DNA of 64,000 bases from sequence record MK250027.1; one strand, written 5' to 3'. Shown here in pieces: positions 30,823 through 45,109 of this stretch (the stretch's first letter is position 1; each line of letters opens with the position of its first letter). The position numbers and the translations under genes are program-made. The notes beneath the pieces were generated by a model. That model was not told where the DNA came from. It did not search any database and worked only from the letters and a program-made list of their open reading frames with translations.

Positions 30823-31416
30823 ATGAGGATAACTACATTAGAACAATTAAAAGAATATACCACATATACATATTTTAAAAATAATGATCCTGAATATACA
30901 AAAAAGAAAAAGGTATATATATGTCAACCTGTTAATTATATAGATGAAGGTTTGAAACATATGGATATATGGTCTGGATATATTTTCTATAAGACTAATG
31001 CAAATTCTCGTAAAGTCGGTTTTTATGGATTTATGTTAGATATTGATAATGATCCTACATATAAAAAGAAAACGAAAGGTCAACCTGAATATATGCGAAA
31101 ATTATCACCTATGTGGTATGTTAATAAAACTTTATATAAAACACAAAGTGAAGAAAATGTTAAGTTGTTTCCAGATTTAAAATTAGAAGAAAATTTTTTA
31201 ATCGAGAAAAATAAAGCTATATTTACATTAAAGAAAGAAGCAGAACAATATATAAAGGATATTAAAAACAACATTATTAAATTACCTGAGGTTGAACATA
31301 TAGTTACGATGAAAACATGGTATAAAGATAAAGACGGTAATAAGATAGAAGAAACTTCTGTAAAACATTTGCCAAGCGGTAGAACTGATGTAACAAGAAA
31401 AATAGTTAAAGAATAA
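30823..31416 (+). CDS. Hypothetical protein
   Basis: 197-aa ORF with no TAG; terminator at 31424-31456. Confidence 0.7.
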   Translation: MRITTLEQLKEYTTYTYFKNNDPEYTKKKKVYICQPVNYIDEGLKHMDIWSGYIFYKTNANSRKVGFYGFMLDIDNDPTYKKKTKGQPEYMRKLSPMWYVNKTLYKTQSEENVKLFPDLKLEENFLIEKNKAIFTLKKEAEQYIKDIKNNIIKLPEVEHIVTMKTWYKDKDGNKIEETSVKHLPSGRTDVTRKIVKE

Positions 31417-31503
31417 TATAAATAAAAGTCTTCATATTAGTTTATGAAGACTTTTTCTTTTTTATGACTATATAAATGTTAATTAACTATAATTTAATAA
31501 TAG

Positions 31504-32658
31504 ATGAATACAGAAAATAAATTTAATTATGTTCTCGTTGGTGGAACATACAATGATAATAAAGGTAAAGAATCTGGAGTTGTAAATAAATTATATCATG
31601 CATTAGGAACATTTAATGCAAAAATGTATAATGGTGGTAATTACTATGATTTAGTCGGAGAAGCATTATCCGCCATTTCAGAAACAGATCTTATTATATG
31701 GATGGCAGATGTTGATAACAAAAAAGAGAAAGTGTATCCAAAGAAAAATACCGGTTCTGTTTTGATTTGTTCAAAAGTTATTCGTGATGATTATACTTAT
31801 AAGGATGCAATAGCACGTATATTCAAAATGCATGGTAATGCCGTCATTGCAATTACAAAGGATAATGAAACAAATATGTTTGTATTTGAATTTTGGGACG
31901 CATTAGCAAACTGTTGGTATAGAGGAAGTGATATTGAAAAACTTGCATTAACTATATATCGTTTTTATATATTCAGTAGAGGTAGTATTCGCAGACAAAC
32001 ATATAGAGATAAATCATTAGTTTCATATAATGATGGAAGACCAGATGATTTGAATGATTTCATTAAGTTAAACAATGGATTAGCAGATTTTATTCAAACT
32101 TCATGCGGAGATAGGTTTTTTGGGAATTTGTCCACAAGATGTCAGAAGTTATTTCCATCAGAACGAAAAGGTAAATTTATTTATGTAAGTCCAAGAAACG
32201 TAGATAAGAATAGATTAACACCATCTGATTTTGTATTGTTTGATACTGATGATTATTCTTATTATGCAGTAGACGAAAAAATGAAACCTTCTGTTGATTC
32301 TCCTGTACAAGCAGAATTATATAAGGAATTTCCGACAATTAATTATATGATTCATGGACATGCATTTGTACATGTAATGAAAGATATAGATGAAGCAAAT
32401 ATACCAGTTGTAAGTACAGAGAACTATTTTCCATGTGGTGATCTCAGGGAATTGTCAGAAGTAAAGAAATTAATGAAGTTCATTATATATGATGAATGTC
32501 ATAAGAACTATGGTATCATTAATCTTAAAGGACATGGTTTTTTAATGTTCAGTCAGACTTTTGAACAAATGCAATATATGATTAATGATATACATTCATT
32601 TGTTATGAATGATGGTAATAGATTATTTAATTTAAAGCTAATTGATTATGGGATTTAA
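31504..32658 (+). CDS. Class II aldolase/adducin-like protein
   Basis: GNLS, YVSPRNVDK, KPSVDS..Q..LY, MIHGH, NLKGHG. Confidence 0.7.
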   Translation: MNTENKFNYVLVGGTYNDNKGKESGVVNKLYHALGTFNAKMYNGGNYYDLVGEALSAISETDLIIWMADVDNKKEKVYPKKNTGSVLICSKVIRDDYTYKDAIARIFKMHGNAVIAITKDNETNMFVFEFWDALANCWYRGSDIEKLALTIYRFYIFSRGSIRRQTYRDKSLVSYNDGRPDDLNDFIKLNNGLADFIQTSCGDRFFGNLSTRCQKLFPSERKGKFIYVSPRNVDKNRLTPSDFVLFDTDDYSYYAVDEKMKPSVDSPVQAELYKEFPTINYMIHGHAFVHVMKDIDEANIPVVSTENYFPCGDLRELSEVKKLMKFIIYDECHKNYGIINLKGHGFLMFSQTFEQMQYMINDIHSFVMNDGNRLFNLKLIDYGI

Positions 32659-33331
32659 TATTAAATCATTGTTTGTTGTAGAAGAAGATACTGCAAATAA
32701 AGATAAAGTTGAAATTAAGCAGGATAAAGTAGAACCTACTGTAAAAAAGCAAGAAGTAAAAGTAGAACAACCAGTAAAAACTGACGGTACTAATACAAAT
32801 GATGAATCAAAATCTCCTACTGATGAAGTGAACCATGAATTCCTTGATAAACTTTGCAATTATTTGGAAACATGTAAAATTGAAGGTGGCGATTATATGC
32901 AATTGAAGAAAGCAGCAAATAGTGAGGGTATGCAATGTATTCCCGATGAATCGGTTAGGTTCCAAGCTGCATTTGCAACACTTAAGAGTGTAAATCCTAA
33001 CCTTACAAAGGATATTATTCTTTCTTCTATTGATACTTATATTAATGAGATGAATAAGCAACGAGATATTGCTATTGATCAAGTTGAAAAGAAACGTAAG
33101 ATTAATGTAGGAGACAAGTCTAAAGCTATTGCAGATAAACAAAAACAAATTGCAGATCTTCAAAATGAAATTGTTAAGTTATCTACCGAGGTATCAACAA
33201 TGAAAGAAGAAGTTGATAAAGCAGATGAAGAATGTAATAGAAATGCACGAGAATTTACGAATGCTGTTAATATTATTGTTAACGCATTGGAATCAGATAA
33301 GAAAAAGATTTCAGAAAAATTAGTAGGTTAA
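32642..33331 (+). CDS. Coiled-coil protein, first gene of the ABC/OmpA operon
   Basis: Disordered N-terminus, helical core, long heptad C-terminus. Confidence 0.8.
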   Translation: MIMGFNIKSLFVVEEDTANKDKVEIKQDKVEPTVKKQEVKVEQPVKTDGTNTNDESKSPTDEVNHEFLDKLCNYLETCKIEGGDYMQLKKAANSEGMQCIPDESVRFQAAFATLKSVNPNLTKDIILSSIDTYINEMNKQRDIAIDQVEKKRKINVGDKSKAIADKQKQIADLQNEIVKLSTEVSTMKEEVDKADEECNRNAREFTNAVNIIVNALESDKKKISEKLVG

Positions 33332-33339
33332 ATTAATAT

Positions 33340-33522
33340 ATGAAAGTAATAATTAAGAATTATGATTCTACAAAAGCAAATGATATTGTAATTCCTGTTG
33401 AAAATAATATGGATAAACATGTAGACTTTTCTAGCGGTTATGTAGTATTATCAGATGGAAATAATGTTAAGAAAGTTTATATTGATTTTAACAAATATCC
33501 TGAAGTAGAATTAGATTTATAA
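33340..33522 (+). CDS. Small hypothetical protein
   Basis: 60-aa ORF inside the operon. Confidence 0.55.
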   Translation: MKVIIKNYDSTKANDIVIPVENNMDKHVDFSSGYVVLSDGNNVKKVYIDFNKYPEVELDL

Positions 33523-33543
33523 TATATAAAAATATTTTAAAGT

Positions 33544-34611
33544 ATGTCAGATTATAGTACAACAGATGTTATTAATGTTGCGAAGAATAAAGTATCACAA
33601 TGGGAGAAACCTGGTGGTACAACAGGTATGATTGTATTGGGTGTTGCCGTTGGTGCTATTGCAATTAATATTACACCTATTATGAATTTTATTGCGGCTG
33701 CTTGTGCAAGTACACTTAGTGCAATTGGAATGGCTGCTGCTCTTTTCCTTGTATTATATTGTTTGTTTGACCCACGTATTCGTAATATAGGTTCAACTAT
33801 CTATTTTATGATTATGAGGAAGATTGAAGGACTTCTCGTAGATTATGATCCTATTTCTATTGTGAAAAGAAAGATTGCAGAGATGAATAAGAAAATTCAG
33901 GAGATTACTGATAATATGGGTAAACTTCGTGGATTGATTGATAAATCAGAGAAACGTATTCAGGAAAAGAGAAAACAATGTGATCATGATTTTCAAATGC
34001 TTAATAAGTATAAGCAAACAGGAAAGATGCAAGATGCTGCTGTTTATGAAAGACAAGTAGCAAGACTTACAGAAGTAATTAAGAATTCTGAAGCGAGACT
34101 TACTCAATCAAAGCAGTGGTATGAGATTATGGGCAAACTTAAGCATCAGGCAGACCTTACAGTTCTTGATGCAACAAATGAGATTAATGAACGCGTAGAA
34201 GAATGGGAAATGATTAAGGCACAACACAAGGCATTCACTTCTATTGTCGGTATTATCAACGGTAAGGATGATCAATTCAGTTTGTTTACTCGTGCAATGG
34301 ATCATATGGCAGATGATATTTCTCAGAAGCTTGGTGAGATGTCATTTATTATTGAGGAAACTGGAGGTTTGATGTCAAAGATTGATATGGATAATCTTGT
34401 GATGTCTGATAAAGCAAATGCTCTTCTTGCTCAATATAATGCAGGTGGTTTGGATGCAGTTCTACTTGGTAGTTTTGCAAATCAACCAATTGAACATCAA
34501 CCATCAGAAACTGTAGAATTTAAGGAAGTAGAATATGCAAAAACTAATAGTAATGCAAGTTCTATTACAAATAATAAACAACAAACGCTTAGTCAACCTA
34601 ATTGGTTCTAA
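33544..34611 (+). CDS. Membrane-anchored PspA/IM30-like coiled-coil protein
   Basis: Two N-terminal hydrophobic helices then a long amphipathic coiled coil; PspA-likeness is inferred. Confidence 0.6.
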   Translation: MSDYSTTDVINVAKNKVSQWEKPGGTTGMIVLGVAVGAIAINITPIMNFIAAACASTLSAIGMAAALFLVLYCLFDPRIRNIGSTIYFMIMRKIEGLLVDYDPISIVKRKIAEMNKKIQEITDNMGKLRGLIDKSEKRIQEKRKQCDHDFQMLNKYKQTGKMQDAAVYERQVARLTEVIKNSEARLTQSKQWYEIMGKLKHQADLTVLDATNEINERVEEWEMIKAQHKAFTSIVGIINGKDDQFSLFTRAMDHMADDISQKLGEMSFIIEETGGLMSKIDMDNLVMSDKANALLAQYNAGGLDAVLLGSFANQPIEHQPSETVEFKEVEYAKTNSNASSITNNKQQTLSQPNWF

Positions 34612-34659
34612 GAATTATTTTATCATTCATTTCATTAATTATATTTTTTATTTAATCTT

Positions 34660-34698
34660 AGTGAACTATATGGATTTATTTCTATAGTTCACTTTTTT
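34660..34698 (+). terminator. Terminator
   Basis: agtgaactata/tatagttcact plus T-run. Confidence 0.7.
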
Positions 34699-34715
34699 AT
34701 TTAATATTTTATGTG

Positions 34716-34723
34716 TATCTTTG
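34716..34723 (+). promoter_or_regulatory. Bacteroidota sigma-A -7 element
   Basis: TGTGTATCTTTGTATTGT. Confidence 0.7.
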
Positions 34724-34760
34724 TATTGTAAATTATTTAACTAATTAAAATAGAAAAATT

Positions 34761-35102
34761 ATGTTAAAGGTCGTAGATACATCATATTATATAATTAATA
34801 ATAAAGAAAAGAAAGAATTCTTTATATATTATGATATAAACCATAAAATAGATTGTAATATGTCATTATGGGATATTATGTTTGATTTAAATATTGAAAA
34901 TGTAAATGAAGATAATAAAGATTTTCTTTTACAAGAATTCTTTAAAAAGAATTGGACACGATTCTTTATGATTAAATCTATTCCTTATGATACTATGGTA
35001 AATGTATTACCATGGGATAGTATTTTAAATATGGTAAATCAAATTGCGCAAACAATAGTTAAATATGAAGATTTAAAAGCTATTCCATCAAACAATAAGT
35101 AG
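34761..35102 (+). CDS. Hypothetical protein
   Basis: 113-aa ORF. Confidence 0.6.
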   Translation: MLKVVDTSYYIINNKEKKEFFIYYDINHKIDCNMSLWDIMFDLNIENVNEDNKDFLLQEFFKKNWTRFFMIKSIPYDTMVNVLPWDSILNMVNQIAQTIVKYEDLKAIPSNNK

Positions 35103-35171
35103 TTTTTAAAATAAAAGAATAATAGAAATAAACAAATTAATTTAATAACTTTAATAAAAGATTAAAAAATT

Positions 35172-36755
35172 ATGGCAAATGTAGTTTTGCGACCTTGGGT
35201 AAAGGTTGTAGGAGTTATTGCGGTAGTTGCCGCTATTATGTTTGGTGCATCGAAATTCTTCGGTGGTAATAGTGATGATAAGTCATCTTCTAATAGTGGA
35301 GGATTGTTCAGTAACATTTTCTCTGGTAGTGATGATAACGTTATTACTATTGGTACAAATACATATGCAGGATTCCTTCCATTTATGTATTTGAATAATG
35401 GTCTTAATCCTAATGAGGATTGCCCTATTTACAAGGAATATGGTATTAAGTTGAAGATTGTCGTACAAGATGATTTTGCTGCAGGTCGAGCCGCATTTAA
35501 GAACGGCGATATTGATATTATTTATTGTACTGCAGATGCTCTTCCTGTTGAAATGAGCGAAGGTTCTGATATGAATGATACAAAATTCTTCAATATTTCT
35601 AACTGGTCACGAGGTGCTGATGCCATTGTAGTTAATAAAGGAATTCAGAATGTAAGCGGACTTATTGGTAAGGTTGTTTGTTGTTCACAGGGTACAGCAT
35701 CTCATACACTTTTGTTGAATACACTTGAGACAAATGGTATTGGAACAGATAAAGTAAACATGAGTAATTCTGTTGATCCAAATAAGGTTAATGTGAAGGT
35801 TGTAGATAGTGGCTTGGATGCAGCAAGTGCATTCCGTGCAGGTTCATGTGATGCAGCAGTTGTATTCTCTCCAGATGATCAGGATTTGGTTGCAACTGTT
35901 AAGGGAGCGCATGTATTGATTTCTACAACACAAGCATCAAATATTATTTGTGATGGTTTGATTGCAAAGCAGAGTTATCTTGATTCTAATAAGGAAAATA
36001 TAAAGAAACTTATTTCTGCATTGTTGTGGGCAAATAATCTTATGAATACTGATAGTAAAGCTGTAGCAACAGCAGCAAAGGCATTTGCAACTGCATATAA
36101 TACAGATGAGAATTTCGCTATTAATGGTTCAAAGAATATTCATTATGTCACATTGGGTGATGCTCAGAATTTCTTTGGGTTGAATAGCTCATATACAGGT
36201 GTAAAGGGAGATGAATTGTATTCAAAGATGGCTCGTACATATGAGTCTCTTGGACTTTGTAAGCATCCACTTGCATGGAGGAAAGTATCTTATTCTGATA
36301 TTATTGAGAGTATTGCATCTGAGCCTGATAAGGTAAAGGGCGATCAGTCTGCAGAAGCAGGTCCAAAGTTTAATGAAACATCTATATCAGATGCAGAAAC
36401 GAAGACAGCAATTTCAGACAAGAAGGTAACTATTGAATATGGTGTAAATAGTGATATTCTTGATAACGCAGCACAGAGTATTATTGATAAGGAATTTGCT
36501 GGTATTGCAAAACAGTTTGCAGGTTCAAAGATTCGAATTATTGGTAATACGGATAATACAGGTAATTATGCATATAATGTAGATTTGTCTCGTAGACGTG
36601 CACAGTCTGTTGCTAATTATCTTGTAAAAGAATATGGATTTGATAAGAATCGTTTCATTATTATTGGTAATGGTCCAAAGCGTGCTGTTACAGATGGTGT
36701 AGTAGGAGATAATAAGTCATATCGTTCTACTGATTTTCAGTTGATTTCAGAGTAA
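35172..36755 (+). CDS. ABC substrate-binding protein (NMT1/SsuA-like) fused to a C-terminal OmpA-like peptidoglycan-binding domain
   Basis: N-terminal TM; WSRGADAIVV, GTASHTLL, DAAVVFSPD; IIGNTD...NVDLSRRRAQSVANYL...IGNG. Confidence 0.85.
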   Translation: MANVVLRPWVKVVGVIAVVAAIMFGASKFFGGNSDDKSSSNSGGLFSNIFSGSDDNVITIGTNTYAGFLPFMYLNNGLNPNEDCPIYKEYGIKLKIVVQDDFAAGRAAFKNGDIDIIYCTADALPVEMSEGSDMNDTKFFNISNWSRGADAIVVNKGIQNVSGLIGKVVCCSQGTASHTLLLNTLETNGIGTDKVNMSNSVDPNKVNVKVVDSGLDAASAFRAGSCDAAVVFSPDDQDLVATVKGAHVLISTTQASNIICDGLIAKQSYLDSNKENIKKLISALLWANNLMNTDSKAVATAAKAFATAYNTDENFAINGSKNIHYVTLGDAQNFFGLNSSYTGVKGDELYSKMARTYESLGLCKHPLAWRKVSYSDIIESIASEPDKVKGDQSAEAGPKFNETSISDAETKTAISDKKVTIEYGVNSDILDNAAQSIIDKEFAGIAKQFAGSKIRIIGNTDNTGNYAYNVDLSRRRAQSVANYLVKEYGFDKNRFIIIGNGPKRAVTDGVVGDNKSYRSTDFQLISE

Positions 36756-36773
36756 TTAAAATAAATTATAAAC

Positions 36774-36823
36774 ATGCGGTTTATAGAAAATAATTTTTAT
36801 TAAATTCTATAAACCGCATTTTT
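36774..36823 (+). terminator. Terminator-like hairpin
   Basis: atgcggtttataga/tctataaaccgcat plus T-run. Confidence 0.7.
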
Positions 36824-36827
36824 AATT

Positions 36828-37325
36828 ATGAAATATAAGCATGAATTAATAGGTAAGAAAGTATTAATTATATGTGATTGTGATGGTATAAGTATTCATC
36901 GAATATATTGTGCATATATATTGGGTGAAGTTATTGATTATAATCCTATTACAAATGAAATAAGTATTAGGATAATTAATAATGATATGAATTACTATAG
37001 AATGTACAAATTATTTTATAGTAAATTAGGAACACGTACATATTTTGAATTTAAACTTAATACATATGATCCTTTTGATCATAAATACTGTTCAGATAAT
37101 CGTTTAGGATATATAGATCCAAGGGACTATAATGATTTATGGTGGTATGAAGCATATTCAGGTAATGAAGCAATATCATTATTAAAAAATAACCTATTAG
37201 AAACAAAAGATAAACCTGTATATAATTATTGTTATCTATCTACTGATTGTTATGGTAGTTTTAAATCTAAAAAAGAATATTTAACATATCTTTTAAATGA
37301 ATTAAGTAATGAAAATACAGAATGA
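36828..37325 (+). CDS. Paralog family X, copy 1
   Basis: MKYKHELIGKKVLIIC...YCAYILG...DPF. Confidence 0.75.
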   Translation: MKYKHELIGKKVLIICDCDGISIHRIYCAYILGEVIDYNPITNEISIRIINNDMNYYRMYKLFYSKLGTRTYFEFKLNTYDPFDHKYCSDNRLGYIDPRDYNDLWWYEAYSGNEAISLLKNNLLETKDKPVYNYCYLSTDCYGSFKSKKEYLTYLLNELSNENTE

Positions 37326-37749
37326 TTTAATAGGTAAAAAAGTACTAATTATTCATACATATGTTAGTAAATTCTTTAGGAGTTATTGTACATACCATAT
37401 AGCAACAATTAAATATTATTATCCATCAGGTAATTTTATTATTGTAGAATGTCCGAATATTAATCGCACAAGATTTACATTAATAGATCATGATGATCCA
37501 TTTATAAATAAAGATTATTCAGATAAAAAATTGGCAATGAATTTTTCAACTAATGATGGATGGTATTATGTATTTACAAATGAATATTCAATCAAGCAAT
37601 TAAAATATAATTTAATACATTATAAGAATAAACGTTCATTCAATAGTTGTAGAATGATAGTTTCTACGGGGCGTTTAATGACAACAAAAGAACGAAAAAA
37701 CTGTTTTGAAACATTATTAAGTAAAATACAAGATGAAATATCGAAATGA
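37309..37749 (+). CDS. Paralog family X, copy 2
   Basis: MKIQNDLIGKKVLII...YCTY...DDPF. Confidence 0.75.
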   Translation: MKIQNDLIGKKVLIIHTYVSKFFRSYCTYHIATIKYYYPSGNFIIVECPNINRTRFTLIDHDDPFINKDYSDKKLAMNFSTNDGWYYVFTNEYSIKQLKYNLIHYKNKRSFNSCRMIVSTGRLMTTKERKNCFETLLSKIQDEISK

Positions 37750-38191
37750 TTTAATAGATAAGAAAGTATTAATTATATGTAATAGTTCTGGTCCTAACAA
37801 CTGGAATCATTATTGTAGTTATGTTGTTGGGAAAGTAATAAGTTATAATCCATCTATTAATTCTATAATGATTGAATATGGTGATAAAACACGAAACTAT
37901 TTTTCTTTAATTGATTATAATGATCCATTTAAGAAACATAATGATAGTTATAATAGAGGACTATATAAACGATTAGCATATAAAATACCATTGAATAGAT
38001 ATTCAGAAAGTTGGTGGTATGATGTCTTTTCATTACAATCTGCAGAAAAATTATTAAATCATAATATTAAACATTCACGAGAAAAATATGTATATGGTGA
38101 ATGTATATTATCAAAAGTATGTTATAATCATATAAGTAAAAAGAATTTTTTTGAATTATTATTAAAAGAATTAAAAGATGAATCTAATTAA
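37733..38191 (+). CDS. Paralog family X, copy 3
   Basis: MKYRNDLIDKKVLIIC...YCSYVVG...NDPF. Confidence 0.75.
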   Translation: MKYRNDLIDKKVLIICNSSGPNNWNHYCSYVVGKVISYNPSINSIMIEYGDKTRNYFSLIDYNDPFKKHNDSYNRGLYKRLAYKIPLNRYSESWWYDVFSLQSAEKLLNHNIKHSREKYVYGECILSKVCYNHISKKNFFELLLKELKDESN

Positions 38192-39011
38192 ACGTTTATT
38201 TAAATTTGGAGGAACTTCTGATTTTGGTACGTTAACAAATGTAATTATTAGTATCATAGGTGCTGTTATTATCATTATGGGATGGCATTTCATTTCTGCA
38301 TATGATATTGTATCTAGTAATATTCTTCCAGATCCATTTAAGGTAATTGGTAGTATTCCTACACTTATTACTGAAAATCATTTGTTTGCAAATATTTGGT
38401 ATACAGTGAAACTAAATCTTTCATGTTATGTATATGCAATTTTGCTGTCATTTCCAATAGGATTTTTTATAGCATTATATCCTATTAATAATATACTATT
38501 TGGAAAATATATTAATTCTGTAAGATTTATTCCATTGCCTTCTATTACAGGAATTTTCTTAGCAATATTTGGACTTACATTTGGAATGAAAGTATGGTTT
38601 CTTACTGTTGCAATTATGATTTACATTATTCCTTCTGTTGTTAATAAGGTAAATGATTTACAAAATCCTGCTAATGAAAAAGATAATGTATATCTTCAGA
38701 CCGCACAAACAATGGGTATGTCTGCATGGCAGAAGTTCAGATATGTATATTTCCCTTATGTAACAGGTGGTGTAGTTGATTCTTGTATTGATTTGCTTGC
38801 AATTAGTTATAGTTATGTAGTTATTGCAGAAATGATTTATAAGGATGGAACTATAAGTGGTATGGGTGCATTGATTAATACGATGGTAAGACAATCACAA
38901 ATGTCTTCCGCATATGCATTGTTATTCTTAATTATTATTATTGGTTGCGTACAGGATTTCTTGTTTAAGAAAGGTGCAAGACTATTATTTCCTTACAAAT
39001 ATAAAAATTAA
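38178..39011 (+). CDS. ABC transporter permease (SsuC/NitT-like)
   Basis: LPDPFKV, multiple TMs, EAA loop YLQTAQTMGMSAWQKFRYVYFP. Confidence 0.9.
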   Translation: MNLIKRLFKFGGTSDFGTLTNVIISIIGAVIIIMGWHFISAYDIVSSNILPDPFKVIGSIPTLITENHLFANIWYTVKLNLSCYVYAILLSFPIGFFIALYPINNILFGKYINSVRFIPLPSITGIFLAIFGLTFGMKVWFLTVAIMIYIIPSVVNKVNDLQNPANEKDNVYLQTAQTMGMSAWQKFRYVYFPYVTGGVVDSCIDLLAISYSYVVIAEMIYKDGTISGMGALINTMVRQSQMSSAYALLFLIIIIGCVQDFLFKKGARLLFPYKYKN

Positions 39012-39019
39012 TAAAGATT

Positions 39020-40009
39020 ATGAGTGATTTTAAAACATTATTTGGACAAAATAATCAAGAGGATAAGAAAACACCTATCCTGTTAGAACAAGAAAAAAAT
39101 ATTAATTCATCTACAAATGATTCCAGTATTCCTGATGTAAGTAATAATGTAGATAAGTCAAATACACCAGATGTAAGTTTACCTAATAATCAGAAAAAAG
39201 ATCGGGGTGATGGTAAAATAGATGTTGTTAATTTTAAAAATTTAACACAAATATTTAATAAAGGTAAGAAAAATGAATATAAATTATTTGAAAATTTCTC
39301 TTTGAATATAAATGATATTCCGAATGATTTTCAATCCGTGAGTATTATGGGCACATCTGGCTGTGGAAAAAGCAGATTAGTACGTCTTTTATGTGGATTG
39401 GATGACGTTCAATCTGGAAGTGTTTCTGTATATGGTAAATCATTATCAGAATTTGGTAATATTCCTATGGTATTTCAAAATCATAGTAATAGTAATTATC
39501 CTTGGATGAAAATTATAGATAATGTAATGTTACCAATGATTATTAGAGGATTTTCTAAAAAAGATGCGTATGAGAAAGCATTACAATTGATTAAGTTAGT
39601 TGGACTTGAAGGAAAAGAAAACGATTATCCAAATATGCTAAGTGGCGGACAAAATCAACGTATAGCAATTAGTAAATGTCTTGCTTCGAATTCTCAAATT
39701 ATTGTATTAGATGAAGCAACTGGCGCATTAGATATAAAAATGAAAAAAGAGATTCAAAATATTATTTTAAAAATATTATATGATTCAAACGTAGATCCTA
39801 CTATTATTAATATTACTCATAGTATTGAAGAGGCTCTATATATAAGTAATAAAATTTTTATATTAAAAGCTAACCCTTGCGGTATTGTTAAAGTTATGAA
39901 TATTCATTATCCAAATGAAGAAAATATGCACCGAGATGAATGGATTTTTCAAACAGAAGAGTATAAAAAATATTATTTAGAATTATCAAAAACATTATCT
40001 AATATTTAA
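39020..40009 (+). CDS. ABC transporter ATPase (SsuB/TauB-like)
   Basis: Walker A GTSGCGKS, Q-loop VFQ, LSGGQNQR, LDEATGALD, ITH. Confidence 0.92.
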   Translation: MSDFKTLFGQNNQEDKKTPILLEQEKNINSSTNDSSIPDVSNNVDKSNTPDVSLPNNQKKDRGDGKIDVVNFKNLTQIFNKGKKNEYKLFENFSLNINDIPNDFQSVSIMGTSGCGKSRLVRLLCGLDDVQSGSVSVYGKSLSEFGNIPMVFQNHSNSNYPWMKIIDNVMLPMIIRGFSKKDAYEKALQLIKLVGLEGKENDYPNMLSGGQNQRIAISKCLASNSQIIVLDEATGALDIKMKKEIQNIILKILYDSNVDPTIINITHSIEEALYISNKIFILKANPCGIVKVMNIHYPNEENMHRDEWIFQTEEYKKYYLELSKTLSNI

Positions 40010-40052
40010 ATAGATAAATATAATGGATTCATAATTATTTATGAATTTATAT

Positions 40053-40090
40053 TTTGCAAAGTTGAGCATATTACTAAATTTAGTAATATG
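40053..40090 (+). terminator. Terminator between the ATPase and the endonuclease
   Basis: gagcatattactaaa/tttagtaatatgctc plus T-run. Confidence 0.75.
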
Positions 40091-40139
40091 CTCTTTTATT
40101 TTATAGATAAATATAATGCAAAATATAAATTAAATAATT

Positions 40140-41303
40140 ATGAGAAATATTACACATGATGAATTTATCACATGTGCTAGATCTATACACGGTGATAAAT
40201 ATGATTATTCATAGACAAAGTTTATTAATAAATCTACGTTAATTAAGGTATCTGATAATATACATGGTATTTTTGAAATTCTTCCATTTAAACATTTATT
40301 ATACGATGGATATAATAAAAATTATTTAAATAGTTATGCGAATGAATACAAAAAACATTTTATAGAAGTATGAGTTCATAATAATAAATATGATTATTCA
40401 AAAACAGTATATATACATTCATAAACAAAAATGTTAATAACATGTCCTATACATGGTGATTTTTATCAATTACCAATGTCACATATACATGGTAAAGGTT
40501 GTAGTAAATGTGGTGATTTATCTACAGCTTATAAACAAGCATATACAACTGAAGAATTTATTAATAAATCAAAATAGATACATGGTAATAAATATGATTA
40601 TTCTAATGTACATTATATAAGTAACAAATATAAGGTTATTATAGGATGTCCTATACATGGTAATTTTTTATAGTCTCCTGATAAACATTTAAATGGTTGT
40701 GGTTGTAGAAAATGTGCTGATATTTATACAGCAAATGTACGTAGAAAAACTACAGAATGGTTTATTACTAAAGCAATACAAATACATGGTATGAGATATG
40801 ATTATAGTAAAGTAAATTATACTGGTATTTGGAATAAAATAAAAATAATTTGTAATGAACATGGGACTTTCTTTTAGTCTCCTCGAAAGCATTTATTAGG
40901 TCATGGTTGTCCAAAATGTGTTTTATATAAATTAGAAAATACAATATCATTATTACTTGATAACAATAATATTAAATATAATAAAAATTATAAAGAATTT
41001 AAATGGTTAATAAATGATATTAATCATTCATTAGAATTAGATTTCTATATACCTGAATATAATATTGCTATAGAATGTTAGGGTAAATAGCATTTTGAAC
41101 CAGTTGAAAAATTTGGAGGAAATGAAGCATATCAAATATAGGTTAAAAATGATTAGATAAAATAGACATTATGTAAATAGCATAATATAAAATTATGTTA
41201 TTTTTGTGACAAATATAACTATATAAATAATTATAAATTAGGATATTTAACATATAAAACAGAAAATTTATTAGAATATATACGATTTCATTTATTGGTT
41301 TAA
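40140..41303 (+). pseudogene. Decaying homing-endonuclease-like gene (DUF723-like Zn repeats plus PD-(D/E)XK domain), TAG=Gln; true stops at 40371 (TGA) and 40422 (TAA)
   Basis: Repeats IHGxKYDYS...CPIHGxFxQ.P..H..G.GC.KC; LDFYIPEYNIAIEC[TAG]GK[TAG]HF; 10 in-frame TAG. Confidence 0.8.
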
Positions 41304-41308
41304 TATAC

Positions 41309-41656
41309 ATTTCAATAGCCCGATCACTTGCATGTGATTCAAAATTACTTATGTTAGATGAATATTCGTCAGGTCTTGATTATTTCACTAAATTTGAATT
41401 ACAAGATCTTCTATTAAGTATTTTTAATAATAGAGATGTAGATAGAACATTCTTGATGGTTACTCATGATATTTCAGAGGCTGTATATCTTTCAAATCGT
41501 ATTTATATATTGGAACCAAATCCATGTAGAATCAAGGATGTAATTGATATTAAATTCAGTCAACCAAGAACACAAGCTATTCGTGAAACAGATGAATTTA
41601 AAAATTATCAAGCTAAAGTTCTTAAAGCATTAAATGAAACAATTAATAATAAGTAA
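41309..41656 (+). pseudogene. Orphan C-terminal half of a second ABC ATPase (ATG at 41351 gives 101 aa)
   Basis: ISIARSLACDSKLLMLDEYSSGLD...VTHD colinear with 39020 from just after its LSGGQNQR; no Walker A. Confidence 0.85.
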
Positions 41657-41667
41657 TTTTAAAAATT

Positions 41668-42003
41668 ATGACAAAACATATTATAACATTTGGTGATCTT
41701 AATTCTGGAGATCATATTTTTAGATATAGAATTGTTAAAGACAAAGCTAAATTAGAAACATTAGTAGTACAAGATATTAAAATTACAAATGATAAAGCTA
41801 TAATAATTATAAAAGATTCATCCATAATTTATACTTTTGATAAAGAACGAACATATATTATGGGCGGTAATAATGATGATTGGAGTAGTTCTGTCATTGT
41901 CTCCGATTATGAATTAGTGGAATTCATTAAAACTGTTATTAATATAACAAAACAACCACTTATAAGACAACATGTTAATTTAATAAATTTTATATCAGAT
42001 TGA
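41668..42003 (+). CDS. Hypothetical protein
   Basis: 111-aa ORF; terminator at 42009-42048. Confidence 0.65.
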   Translation: MTKHIITFGDLNSGDHIFRYRIVKDKAKLETLVVQDIKITNDKAIIIIKDSSIIYTFDKERTYIMGGNNDDWSSSVIVSDYELVEFIKTVINITKQPLIRQHVNLINFISD

Positions 42004-42061
42004 AATATAAAAAGGTGAGATAATATACTAAACTATCTCACCTTTTTTCTTTATATATAAT

Positions 42062-42514
42062 ATGAAAATATTAAATGATATAGTTAATAAAAAAGTATTA
42101 ATAATATATAAATGTAATGGTCCTGCTGGATGGCATAGAGATTATTGTGGTTATAAAATTGGGAAAATAGTAGAATATAATATTGAAAATAATACTATTA
42201 ATATTGAAGATAAAAAGAAAAATATAAAAACATATAAAATTATAGATAAAAAAGATCCATTTAATTTAAATTTAATACAAAATAATGATAATAGATTCGC
42301 ATATTATCATATTTCAAAATATAGGCAAATACGTGAATGGGAAAATGTTTTTATATATAATGATGCATTAACTATTTTAAAAAATAGTATTAAACAATCA
42401 CATTCACAATATGTATATAAACTATTTTGTTTATCTTCATTTTCATATGGTAAAAAAACAAAGAAAAGGTTTTTAAGAGATTTATTAAAGGAATTAGAAG
42501 AAAATTATCAATAA
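42062..42514 (+). CDS. Paralog family X, copy 4
   Basis: MKILNDIVNKKVLII...YCGYKIG...KDPF. Confidence 0.75.
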   Translation: MKILNDIVNKKVLIIYKCNGPAGWHRDYCGYKIGKIVEYNIENNTINIEDKKKNIKTYKIIDKKDPFNLNLIQNNDNRFAYYHISKYRQIREWENVFIYNDALTILKNSIKQSHSQYVYKLFCLSSFSYGKKTKKRFLRDLLKELEENYQ

Positions 42515-42539
42515 TATTTTTTGTTTAAAATAAAATGTG

Positions 42540-42547
42540 TATCTTTG
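42540..42547 (+). promoter_or_regulatory. Bacteroidota sigma-A -7 element
   Basis: TGTGTATCTTTGTATTGT plus AACAATTAAAAATATA leader. Confidence 0.75.
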
Positions 42548-42588
42548 TATTGTTAATAAAATAATGAACAATTAAAAATATAAACAAT

Positions 42589-42915
42589 ATGAAAGCAAAT
42601 TTTGTAACGGTTATCAAGAAGAGAGCAATCAAGAATGTACCAGCATTTCAAGATTTCTCAATGAAACAGATTAAGGTTATTAGTAATTCACCTAATTATC
42701 CAAATTCTGTAACTTTGTCTATGGACATTTATTGTGATAATGTTGATGGTTATATTTTTAATAATGCATCTACAAATGAACAATATGCATTGACATCTGT
42801 TCAACTTAGTGACGCATTACGTAAGATGATTAGTAATAAAAAGTGTTATAAGCCTAACAGTAAGGAAGATTTACTTAGACTTACATTTGATACTATTGAA
42901 TCTTTTAAATTTTAA
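42589..42915 (+). CDS. Hypothetical protein
   Basis: 108-aa ORF behind the promoter. Confidence 0.7.
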   Translation: MKANFVTVIKKRAIKNVPAFQDFSMKQIKVISNSPNYPNSVTLSMDIYCDNVDGYIFNNASTNEQYALTSVQLSDALRKMISNKKCYKPNSKEDLLRLTFDTIESFKF

Positions 42916-43972: not shown

Positions 43973-45109
43973 ATGATTACAATTACAGAACAATATATAA
44001 AAGAGTACCAAAAGAAATTAGATGATATTTCTAAATCATTTGATTTAGAGAAACAACATATTATAGTTGAAGAATTATCAATTAAAGTTTCTGCACCAGA
44101 TTTTTGGGATGATTTTGAAAGTGCGACATCAATCACAAAAGAACTTAATACAGCAAAAGAAAAGATAGATGATGTTGAACATATGAAAATGCTTATTGAT
44201 GAGTTATCAACTGCATTAATGTATTATAAGGAATTTGAAGGTAAAGATGAAGAAGAATATGTAAATCTAGCGAATTCTGAATTAATTAGTGAATTCAGTA
44301 AATTTGAGGATAAGTATAGATTTGTTGATCCTACAGATTCATTAGGAGCTGTATTAGACATTAATGCAGGTGCAGGAGGAACAGAAGCAAATGATTGGGC
44401 AAATATGTTATTCCGTATGTATGAGATGTGGGCAAAATCAAATAATTATAAGTTTAATGTTTTATATTATTCAGAAGGGGATAAAGTAGGTATTAAAAAT
44501 GTATCTATTGAAATTACTGGTAATAATGCGTATGGAACATTAAAAGGTGAAACCGGTGTTCATAGAATGGTAAGGGTTTCACCATATAATGCACAAGGTA
44601 AACGTATGACTAGTTTTGCTGCAGTTTCTGTTGTGCCTTTAGTAGATAATTCTATCAAGGTTGAAATTGACGATTCTAAATTAACAATAGATACATTTAG
44701 ATCTTCTGGTGCTGGTGGTCAAAATGTAAATAAGGTAGAATCTGGTGTACGTGTAAATTATATGTATACAGATCCAGATACAGGTGAAACAGAAAAAATT
44801 CAAGTTGCAAATACAGAAACAAGAGATCAACCAAAGAATAAAGAAAGAGCAATGCAAATTCTTAAATCTATTCTTTATAAGAAAGCATTGGATAAACAAT
44901 TAGCTAAGAAAAAAGAAATAGAAGATGCAAAACTTAAAAATGAATGGGGTGCACAAATTAGATCTTATGTATTTGATGATAAGCGAGTAAAAGATCATCG
45001 TACAGGTTATCAAACAACTGATGTTGATTCTGTTATGAATGGAAATATAAATGGTTTTATAGAATCATATAATAATTGGATTATTGAGCAAGAAAATAAT
45101 AGACTTTAA
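43973..45109 (+). CDS. prfB: Peptide chain release factor 2
   Basis: GAGGTEANDW, VRVSPY (SPF-type anticodon motif), GAGGQNVNK, WGAQIRSYV; single uninterrupted ORF. Confidence 0.93.
   Translation: MITITEQYIKEYQKKLDDISKSFDLEKQHIIVEELSIKVSAPDFWDDFESATSITKELNTAKEKIDDVEHMKMLIDELSTALMYYKEFEGKDEEEYVNLANSELISEFSKFEDKYRFVDPTDSLGAVLDINAGAGGTEANDWANMLFRMYEMWAKSNNYKFNVLYYSEGDKVGIKNVSIEITGNNAYGTLKGETGVHRMVRVSPYNAQGKRMTSFAAVSVVPLVDNSIKVEIDDSKLTIDTFRSSGAGGQNVNKVESGVRVNYMYTDPDTGETEKIQVANTETRDQPKNKERAMQILKSILYKKALDKQLAKKKEIEDAKLKNEWGAQIRSYVFDDKRVKDHRTGYQTTDVDSVMNGNINGFIESYNNWIIEQENNRL

What the first reader, a model, noticed from the sequence alone, without database searches (positions are those of the whole stretch)
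32642..40009. Complete envelope module: coiled-coil protein, PspA-like membrane protein, peptidoglycan-anchored SBP and ABC permease/ATPase
The phage carries a full NitT/Ssu-type ABC importer whose binding protein is both membrane-anchored and fused to an OmpA-like PG-binding domain. It is preceded by two long coiled-coil proteins, one with two TM helices, and a class II aldolase-like gene lies just upstream. All are TAG-free, so they can be expressed early. The architecture looks more like an envelope-sensing or membrane-remodelling system (superinfection exclusion, or membrane protection during a long latent period) than simple nutrient uptake. I know of no functional description.
Basis: partly seen in the sequence, partly recalled or inferred. 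Interest (0 to 1): 0.75.

Follow-up and report, generated by a model that had tools for sequence, protein, structure and literature searches.

The report
Phage copy of PspA-linked ABC operon
This Lak megaphage carries a five-gene envelope operon, also found in many other phages and in Bacteroidota chromosomes, that pairs a cell-wall-tethered ABC importer with a membrane-anchored PspA-like protein; the operon type has been noted in silico before, but nobody has tested what it does.

Summary
The window is Prevotella phage Lak-B8. Window 32648-40009 encodes a coiled-coil protein, a two-TM PspA/IM30-like protein, a TM-anchored NMT1/SsuA-type binding protein fused to an OmpA-like peptidoglycan-binding domain, a permease and an ATPase. 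None has an in-frame TAG.

The aldolase-like gene upstream is also Lak-only.

The five core genes are syntenic in at least 80 phage loci, including Bacillus phage G and a 735-kb phage. They keep the same order in at least 41 genome or MAG loci, mostly Bacteroidota, including chromosomes of two isolates.

PspA kinship is remote but rests on several independent lines. The second coiled-coil protein has no known relative.

The operon type was already described computationally in bacteria (Ravi et al. 2024) and in huge phages (Yuan and Chen, preprint 2026). No function has been tested.

My best reading is a membrane-maintenance module coupled to solute import, expressed independently of the phage's TAG recoding.

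In Lak-B the original ATPase was replaced by a divergent copy next to a homing-endonuclease gene, leaving a remnant.

The parts
31424..31455 (+). Terminator-like hairpin (13-bp stem, T-run) after the preceding gene; probable upstream limit of the transcription unit
31504..32658 (+). 384-aa protein whose C-terminal half is class II aldolase-like. Found only in the Lak-A/B lineage. Overlaps the next gene by 11 nt, so probably co-transcribed, but not part of the conserved core
   Evidence: dN/dS 0.11
32648..33331 (+). Core gene 1: cytoplasmic partner protein. It has an N-terminal F..FVEE motif, a disordered acidic linker, a small three-helix domain and a single helix of about 100 residues. No known family
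   Evidence: present in 71 of 83 phage loci and most genome loci
33340..33522 (+). 60-aa ORF, Lak-only, function unknown
33544..34611 (+). Core gene 2: PspA/IM30-like (ESCRT-III superfamily) protein anchored by a two-TM hairpin. The cytoplasmic part has a helical hairpin at 103-231, then two more helices and a conserved aromatic motif at the C-terminal end
   Evidence: dN/dS 0.06
34761..35102 (+). 113-aa ORF, Lak-only, ends in TAG, function unknown
35172..36755 (+). Core gene 3: N-terminal TM anchor or signal, Gly/Ser-rich linker, NMT1/SsuA-type solute-binding domain, linker, and an OmpA-like peptidoglycan-binding domain with the NTD...LSxxRA motif conserved
   Evidence: (phrog_25518, full length, 2e-49)
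36828..38191 (+). Three overlapping tandem paralogues (165, 146 and 152 aa), found only in the Lak-A/B lineage (one copy in Lak-A, three in Lak-B), inserted between the binding-protein and permease genes. No family match
   Evidence: dN/dS 0.50
38178..39011 (+). Core gene 4: type I ABC importer permease (BPD_transp_1-like; EAA-type loop QTAQTMGMSAWQKFRYVYFP)
   Evidence: dN/dS 0.07
39020..40009 (+). Core gene 5: ABC ATPase with all nucleotide-binding motifs and a low-complexity N-terminal extension of about 65 aa. It is a replacement copy, only 41% identical to the Lak-A ATPase
40064..40093 (+). Terminator-like hairpin (13-bp stem, T-run); probable end of the transcription unit
40431..41303 (+). 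Homing-endonuclease-like ORF: repeated HG.F.Q.P..H..G.GC.KC motifs and a Vsr/PD-(D/E)XK-like C-terminus. Readable only with TAG read as a sense codon (9 TAG)
41309..41656 (+). Remnant of the original ATPase gene: its C-terminal third, 94% identical to residues 203-313 of the Lak-A ATPase

Best explanation
The locus is a phage-borne copy of a conserved bacterial five-gene envelope operon.

Parts:
- Three genes make a type I ABC importer of the NitT/TauT (sulfonate, taurine, nitrate) kind.
- Its binding protein is held to the inner membrane by an N-terminal helix and to peptidoglycan by a C-terminal OmpA-like domain.
- The other two genes encode a PspA/IM30-like (ESCRT-III superfamily) protein, fixed in the membrane by a two-helix hairpin, and a cytoplasmic coiled-coil partner of no known family.

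Shown here: the domain identities, the intact ATPase motifs, the synteny in phages and bacteria, purifying selection, and the absence of TAG.

Inferred mechanism:
1. The genes are translated by the unmodified host machinery, independently of the phage's TAG recoding.
2. The tethered transporter takes up a small polar solute.
3. The PspA-like protein coats the inner leaflet around it and keeps the membrane sealed and energised.
4. The partner protein links or regulates the two.
5. The net effect is to keep the Prevotella envelope competent through the long megaphage infection.
For: Identity of the parts.

PspA kinship:
- The family profile has Vipp1 as its best PDB sequence hit, E 8.6e-4, aligned from helix 1.
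- The AF2 model has a hairpin plus two helices.
- Foldseek's best hits are Vipp1 and archaeal CdvB2.
- The Bacillus phage G orthologue lies in ESM Atlas clusters where 15-36% of members carry Pfam PspA_IM30, score 0.96-0.98.
- The Lak type is homologous to that type: hhalign probability 95, E 4e-8.

Functional linkage:
- The five genes are adjacent in 80+ phage loci in two fixed orders.
- They keep the Lak order in 41+ genome or MAG loci, including the chromosomes of Niastella vici and Lacihabitans with housekeeping flanks.

Selection:
- dN/dS is 0.06-0.27 between Lak-A and Lak-B.
- A full ATPase was kept after the original was destroyed.

TAG-free unit bracketed by terminator-like hairpins.

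The same reading is proposed on comparative grounds in PMC11237479 and in the 2026 preprint.
Against: - No experiment exists on any member.
- Neither Pfam nor NCBIfam PspA models hit the Lak protein directly.
- The Bacteroidota/Lak-type profile alone does not find Vipp1 in the PDB sequences.
- VIA-align scores BAR domains as high as PspA (Z 12 against 10.8), so the fold evidence alone is ambiguous.
- The ligand is unknown.
- About 31 related phages that are at least 91% complete have no ABC ATPase at all, so ATP-driven import may not be the essential activity.
- Expression timing is inferred only.
- The complex prediction for the two coiled-coil proteins gave no verdict.
Confidence: 0.5

Rival explanations
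1. Plain auxiliary nutrient importer. The phage boosts uptake of one small solute (a sulfonate, nitrate, bicarbonate, vitamin precursor or osmolyte). The two helical proteins are only assembly or regulatory accessories of the transporter.
For: - The type I importer is complete, with intact motifs.
- Polar residues of the binding domain are invariant from Lak to phage G.
- The nearest solved relatives are TauA, SsuA and a nitrate/alkanesulfonate binder.
- In one marine phage the module sits next to PnuC and a NadR-like gene.
Against: - The importer is linked to a PspA-like protein and its partner in more than 140 loci. This is not seen for ordinary importers of this family.
- The binding protein carries a peptidoglycan tether.
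- One phage subgroup keeps the permease, binding protein and both helical proteins but has no ATPase.
Confidence: 0.2
2. Protection against competitors or host suicide. The module blocks DNA entry by other phages by changing the membrane-to-wall interface. Alternatively it repairs the membrane damage caused by abortive-infection effectors or premature holin action.
For: - PspA family proteins limit proton leakage from damaged membranes (general knowledge; cited).
- The genes are TAG-free, so they can be made without recoding.
- The module is common in large phages.
Against: - The same operon sits in ordinary chromosomal contexts in Bacteroidota, so its primary role is cellular, not anti-phage.
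- The PADLOC defence library was not searched, and no known defence or counter-defence genes stand out among the neighbours.
- No direct evidence.
Confidence: 0.12
3. Force- or state-transducing machine. The wall-tethered binding protein and the ABC core report or drive changes in the distance between membrane and peptidoglycan. They control polymerisation of the PspA-like protein, and the ABC ATPase plays the energy role that Vps4-like AAA+ ATPases play for ESCRT-III.
For: - An AAA+ ATPase follows the operon in only 6 genome loci and in no phage locus.
- A related operon with TM-Snf7 and an AAA+ ATPase is on record.
- Short terminal motifs are conserved on both helical proteins.
Against: - Type I importers are not known to act as mechanotransducers.
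- The ATPase-less phage subgroup argues against an essential ABC engine.
- No interaction was predicted (the job gave no verdict).
Confidence: 0.1
4. Passenger DNA captured from a host, with no role in infection.
For: The core genes have higher G+C (0.26-0.36) than the Lak-only genes around them (0.18-0.25), which is compatible with foreign origin.
Against: - Strong purifying selection.
- The unit is retained across Lak-A, Lak-B, Lak-C and more distant megaphages.
- The ATPase was replaced rather than lost.
Confidence: 0.03

Closest known systems
Bacterial operons with TM-anchored PspA/Snf7, ABC ATPase, permease and a PBPb+OmpA binding protein (Ravi et al. 2024, PMC11237479; example OGG56892.1, Candidatus Handelsmanbacteria)
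   Same: A membrane-anchored ESCRT-III-superfamily protein sits in one operon with an ABC permease, an ABC ATPase and a binding protein fused to an OmpA domain.
   Different: That example has a soluble PspA and a two-domain AAA+ ATPase, and its gene order differs. The phage has neither. It has instead an unrelated coiled-coil partner. Neither system has been tested experimentally.
Phage-encoded PspA next to complete ABC systems in huge phages (Yuan and Chen, bioRxiv 10.64898/2026.10.24.761521)
   Same: PspA-like genes in large phages had a complete ABC system beside them in 15 cases, read as membrane-stress mitigation.
   Different: The preprint's main text mentions neither an OmpA fusion nor a peptidoglycan-binding domain on the binding protein. 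In the parts I read it does not describe the fifth conserved protein, the cellular Bacteroidota counterpart, the two gene orders or the Lak locus; its supplements were not read.
Classical PspA/Vipp1/LiaH (IM30 family)
   Same: Helical hairpin plus further helices, and remote sequence and structure similarity.
   Different: There is no N-terminal amphipathic helix; the protein is fixed by TM helices. No PspBC, PspF or LiaI partners. Pfam and NCBIfam models do not reach the Lak protein.
SsuABC / TauABC / NrtABCD importers (NitT/TauT family)
   Same: The binding-protein fold family, permease family and ATPase family all match.
   Different: All scores are far below the curated cut-offs. The binding protein is doubly tethered. 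The substrate is unknown.
Pal, MotB, YiaD and other OmpA-like peptidoglycan anchors
   Same: The C-terminal domain carries the conserved Asp and Arg motif of peptidoglycan-binding OmpA-like domains.
   Different: Here the domain is fused to a solute-binding protein, not to a lipoprotein, stator or porin.

Membership tests
PspA/IM30/Vipp1 (ESCRT-III superfamily) | Match to the family's curated sequence models (Pfam PF04012, NCBIfam TIGR02977) | tested here: not met
   No Pfam hit is on record for the Lak-A orthologue or for a phage-G-type member. TIGR02977 hits none of 27 family members and does not hit the orthologous gene in four phage records.
PspA/IM30/Vipp1 (ESCRT-III superfamily) | Homology to recognised family members through profiles or intermediates | tested here: met
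   The family profile's best PDB hit is Vipp1 at E 8.6e-4, with further Vipp1 and PspA entries. Phage G gp247 lies in Atlas clusters with PF04012 in 15-36% of members. Lak type against phage-G type gives hhalign probability 95, E 4e-8.
PspA/IM30/Vipp1 (ESCRT-III superfamily) | Long helical hairpin (helices 1 and 2/3) followed by helices 4 and 5 | tested here: met
   The AF2 model has helices at 103-159, 162-231, 244-280 and 289-312. The hairpin has pLDDT of about 90.
PspA/IM30/Vipp1 (ESCRT-III superfamily) | Structural match that stands above other helical folds | tested here: inconclusive
   Foldseek ranks Vipp1 and CdvB2 first, but at E 0.01-0.1. VIA-align gives PspA 4whe Z 10.8 and Vipp1 about 10, while BAR domains score 11-12.
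PspA/IM30/Vipp1 (ESCRT-III superfamily) | N-terminal amphipathic helix for peripheral membrane binding | tested here: not met
   It is replaced by two TM helices in the Lak/Bacteroidota type and one in the phage-G type.
PspA/IM30/Vipp1 (ESCRT-III superfamily) | Polymerisation into rings or rods on membranes | not testable with these tools
   Needs purified protein and electron microscopy.
NitT/TauT-type type I ABC importer | Binding protein of the NMT1/SsuA fold family | tested here: met
   SsuA_fam 8e-19. Pfam NMT1_2 and NMT1 on orthologues. TauA and SsuA among the PDB hits.
NitT/TauT-type type I ABC importer | BPD_transp_1 permease with an EAA loop | tested here: met
   SaoP 5e-19, TauC 2e-8. 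The loop can be read. PF00528 is on the orthologues, though not on record for the Lak-A copy.
NitT/TauT-type type I ABC importer | ATPase with Walker A, Q-loop, signature, Walker B and H-loop | tested here: met
   GTSGCGKS, MVFQN, LSGGQ, IIVLDE and ITHS can be read. TauB 1e-39, NtrCD 4e-38.
NitT/TauT-type type I ABC importer | Known substrate class | not testable with these tools
   All scores are far below the equivalog cut-offs. A ligand screen is needed.
OmpA-like peptidoglycan-binding domain (PF00691) | Domain match with the conserved Asp and Arg of the NTD...LSxxRA motif | tested here: met
   YiaD 2e-16, Pal 4e-10. PF00691. Invariant G458, N459, L472, S473, R476, A477 across all nine aligned sequences, with T460 and D461 invariant in the six-sequence alignment A4.
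TM-PspA/Snf7 + AAA+ + ABC + PBPb-OmpA operon (Ravi et al. 2024) | TM-anchored ESCRT-III-like gene in one operon with an ABC permease, an ATPase and a binding protein fused to OmpA | tested here: met
TM-PspA/Snf7 + AAA+ + ABC + PBPb-OmpA operon (Ravi et al. 2024) | Associated classical AAA+ ATPase | tested here: not met
   A 642-aa AAA+ gene follows the operon in 6 genome loci. It is absent from all 83 phage loci within 8 kb.
TM-PspA/Snf7 + AAA+ + ABC + PBPb-OmpA operon (Ravi et al. 2024) | Second, soluble PspA | tested here: not met
   The soluble partner shows no relation to PspA or to the TM protein (hhalign probability 1-8) and has no PDB fold match.

The most novel reading that the evidence does not exclude
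The wall-tethered 'importer' is not mainly a nutrient pump. It would be the sensing or driving half of a two-part membrane-remodelling machine. The binding protein, stretched between membrane and peptidoglycan, would report envelope strain. The ABC core and the coiled-coil partner would then control where and when the ESCRT-III-like protein polymerises. Megaphages would have taken this machine over to reshape or hold together the host membrane during infection.
Probability: 0.12. Interest if true: 0.85.

Novelty: new member of a known kind. Interest (0 to 1): 0.5.

Why it matters
The module joins three things rarely seen together: an ESCRT-III-type membrane protein, an ABC transporter and a peptidoglycan anchor. 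It is kept under selection in phages of 75 to 735 kb that infect both Gram-positive and Gram-negative hosts, and in many Bacteroidota chromosomes. Nobody has tested it.

It offers a direct way to ask what phage-encoded PspA is for, and how PspA-type proteins work without an AAA+ partner. Bacillus phage G, which carries the module and has a cultured host on record (Bacillus megaterium), could serve as a test system.

The survey here also fixes the true core (five genes, not the aldolase-like gene) and adds a fifth, unnamed protein family that is found with the other four in most loci.

Tried and rejected
- The search for homologous proteins on the TM protein returned only Lak relatives of 88-90% identity with no Pfam label, so it was uninformative.
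A six-sequence alignment worked.
- No whole genome is held for the window.
- NCBIfam TIGR02977 found no PspA at the orthologous gene in four phage records.
- hhalign against the single E. coli PspA sequence gave only short, weak alignments that are collinear with PspA. I could not assemble a proper PspA alignment with the tools.
- The Bacteroidota/Lak-type profile alone found no Vipp1 among PDB sequences.
- The partner protein had no PDB sequence or fold match and no relation to the TM protein or PspA. Only unnamed Bacteroidota and viral Atlas clusters match it.
- Complex prediction on the cytoplasmic parts of the two helical proteins gave no verdict, neither for nor against.
- No RNA run holds the locus, so read laying was not used and expression is untested.
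- A search for further conserved neighbours in the genome loci gave only lineage-level synteny and antisense shadow ORFs.
- The Lak-only genes have no homologues in the genome loci.
- The sigma-70 promoter scan found fewer sites than in shuffled sequence. It does not cover Bacteroidota promoters, so I did not use it.

Full report
**Source and observation**

The window is Prevotella phage Lak-B8. Window 32000-40500 equals MK250027.1 positions 280000-288500 at 100% identity. G+C is about 26%. Many genes are open only if TAG is read as a sense codon.

- a coiled-coil protein at 32648-33331;
- a two-TM coiled-coil protein at 33544-34611;
- a 527-aa binding protein at 35172-36755, with an N-terminal hydrophobic anchor, an SsuA/NMT1-type domain and a C-terminal OmpA-like domain;
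- a permease at 38178-39011;
- an ATPase at 39020-40009 with every nucleotide-binding motif.

From 30823 to 40009 there is no in-frame TAG in 2,932 codons. The terminase gene has 21 in 720, the next gene 11 in 504, and the downstream endonuclease gene 9 in 290. Terminator-like hairpins at 31424-31455 and 40064-40093 bracket the unit.

**The conserved core**

The binding protein matches phrog_25518 over its full length. By tblastn it also occurs in a 735-kb uncultured phage, in Bacillus phage G (gp249 and gp250) and in a gut phage contig.

A pattern scan of IMG/VR with an alignment of these returned 80 loci. Iterated profiles built from the window's proteins, run on all ORFs of 83 phage loci, found:
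- the binding protein in 82 loci;
- the TM coiled-coil protein in 82;
- the permease in 79;
- the soluble coiled-coil protein in 71;
- the ATPase in 48.

These genes are always adjacent and on the same strand, in one of two orders. Lak and other very large phages have partner, TM protein, binding protein, permease, ATPase. Phage G and about 60 gut, marine and other phages of 75-200 kb have permease, (ATPase), partner, TM protein, binding protein.

The aldolase-like gene, the 197-aa gene before it, the two small ORFs and the paralogues occur only in the six Lak-A/B-lineage loci, not in the more distant Lak-like megaphages. They are not core.

**The same operon in bacteria**

A scan of one genome per prokaryotic species found 102 relatives of the binding protein. 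Among the 80 loci kept, 41 show all five genes in the Lak order; most of the rest are cut by contig ends.

Many are large contigs of Bacteroidota, mainly Saprospiraceae, Chitinophagales and Cytophagales. There are also Ignavibacteriota and a few others.

In the isolates Lacihabitans sp. LS3-19 and Niastella vici DJ57 the operon lies among housekeeping genes. A 642-aa AAA+ ATPase follows it in Lacihabitans and five other genome loci, but in none of the phage loci.

In a tree of the binding protein, the phage-G-type phages form one clade (100/100), far from the rest. The Lak-type phages group with two Chitinophagaceae sequences (one from the isolate Niastella vici, one from a MAG) (99/87), beside a large, mostly Bacteroidota clade (99/94). 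The root is unknown, so the direction of transfer is not shown.

Several 'Bacteroidales' and one 'Mycoplasmatota' MAG contigs fall inside the Lak clade. They are probably phage contigs binned into MAGs.

**What the two helical proteins are**

For the TM protein:
- A profile of 27 family members has cyanobacterial Vipp1 as its best hit among PDB sequences (E 8.6e-4). The alignment starts at helix 1, and several more Vipp1 and PspA entries appear among coiled-coil noise.
- The AF2 model (mean pLDDT 66, but about 90 over residues 103-231) shows a long hairpin followed by two helices.
- Foldseek ranks Vipp1 and archaeal CdvB2 first, at weak E-values.
- VIA-align gives PspA Z 10.8 and Vipp1 about 10, but BAR domains score 11-12. 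Shape alone therefore does not decide.
- The phage G orthologue (gp247) falls in ESM Atlas clusters in which 15-36% of members carry Pfam PspA_IM30, score 0.96-0.98, with 96 of 100 hits sharing that label.
- The Lak/Bacteroidota type is homologous to the phage-G type: independent HMM hits down to 2e-11, and hhalign probability 95, E 4e-8.
- Curated PspA models do not reach the Lak protein itself.

I conclude that it is a divergent, TM-anchored member of the PspA/IM30 superfamily, with about 85% confidence. The family keeps an aromatic motif at the very C-terminus after a disordered linker.

The soluble partner has a conserved N-terminal F..FVEE motif, an acidic disordered stretch, a small three-helix domain and one helix of about 100 residues. 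It has no PDB match and no relation to PspA or the TM protein. It matches only unnamed Bacteroidota and viral clusters.

**Selection and turnover**

Between Lak-B and Lak-A, dN/dS is 0.06 for the TM protein, 0.07 for the permease, 0.15 for the binding protein and 0.27 for the partner.

The ATPase is only 41% identical between the two, while its neighbour the permease is 94% identical. Downstream of the Lak-B ATPase lies a TAG-recoded homing-endonuclease-like gene (40431-41303). After it comes the C-terminal third of an ATPase that is 94% identical to the Lak-A ATPase (41309-41653). The original gene was therefore destroyed, and a divergent but complete ATPase took its place. This argues that an ATPase is needed in Lak.

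In contrast, five phage-G-type phages of 135-150 kb that are at least 91% complete have no ABC ATPase anywhere. About 31 loci of that type lack it between the permease and partner genes.

**Prior knowledge**

- Ravi et al. [quoted passage not shown] They suggested a link between membrane remodelling and solute transport.
- Yuan and Chen (bioRxiv, October 2026) found 189 pspA genes in huge phages, 15 of them next to complete ABC systems. They proposed that phage PspA stabilises the membrane during infection.
- I found no experimental study.

**Mechanism**

Shown: the parts, their linkage, selection on them and their freedom from TAG.

Inferred:
1. The binding protein spans from the inner membrane to peptidoglycan and serves a type I importer for a small polar solute.
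2. The PspA-like protein sits in the same membrane with its helical domain in the cytoplasm.
3. The partner binds one or both.

I judge the most likely role to be keeping the host membrane sealed and energised, together with solute uptake, during the long Lak infection (0.5). Plain nutrient import (0.2), exclusion or counter-defence (0.12) and a strain-sensing or force-driven remodelling machine (0.1) remain open.

**Verdict**

However, the operon type is already on record from comparative genomics. The Lak locus is a new member of a known but untested kind.

Noticed in passing
window 40431-41656: A TAG-recoded homing-endonuclease-like gene sits between the present ATPase and a remnant (the C-terminal third) of the original ATPase. 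The remnant is 94% identical to the Lak-A ATPase. This looks like an endonuclease-associated gene replacement in Lak-B.
   Followed up: yes
window 36828-38191 and 42062-42514: A Lak-only family of 146-165-aa proteins, all starting MK..N(D/E)LI.KKVLII. Lak-B has three tandem overlapping copies inside the operon plus a fourth downstream; Lak-A has one. No family match; dN/dS 0.5.
   Followed up: partly
L045-L083 (for example L046, L051, L054, L055, L063): A subgroup of phage-G-type gut phages of about 135-150 kb keeps the permease, partner, PspA-like protein and binding protein but has no ABC ATPase in the locus. Five near-complete genomes have none anywhere.
   Followed up: partly
L171 13296-15224 (Lacihabitans); also L121, L126, L129, L130, L145: A 642-aa AAA+ ATPase directly follows the operon in six genome loci and in no phage locus.
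   Followed up: partly
L087 9601-12132: In a 166-kb marine phage contig the module is followed by a PnuC-type nicotinamide riboside transporter and a NadR-like gene. This is a possible hint of a link to cofactor salvage.
   Followed up: no
window 33544-34611 (C-terminus) and 32648-33331 (N-terminus); alignments A5, A3: Short conserved terminal motifs are separated from the folded parts by disordered linkers: Y-x-x-(L/F)-F at the end of the PspA-like protein, and F..FVEE at the start of the partner. They look like docking peptides.
   Followed up: no
window 30823-42915: The five core genes have G+C of 0.26-0.36. The Lak-only genes between and around them have 0.18-0.25.
   Followed up: no
L001 7824-11029; L093 3474-6197; L094 6697-9425: The binding-protein gene is duplicated in tandem in Bacillus phage G (gp249, gp250) and in two Lak-like contigs. 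In those contigs the first copy is shorter (about 378 aa).
   Followed up: no
L091-L109, L164: Contigs filed under Bacteroidales, Prevotella, Paludibacteraceae and even Mycoplasmatota MAGs carry the module at 46-71% identity and fall inside the Lak phage clade. They are probably megaphage contigs binned into bacterial MAGs.
   Followed up: partly
window 43973-45109: A TAG-free release-factor gene (PCRF and RF-1 domains on the Lak-A orthologue) lies about 4 kb downstream of the operon. It is relevant to the phage's stop-codon recoding.
   Followed up: no
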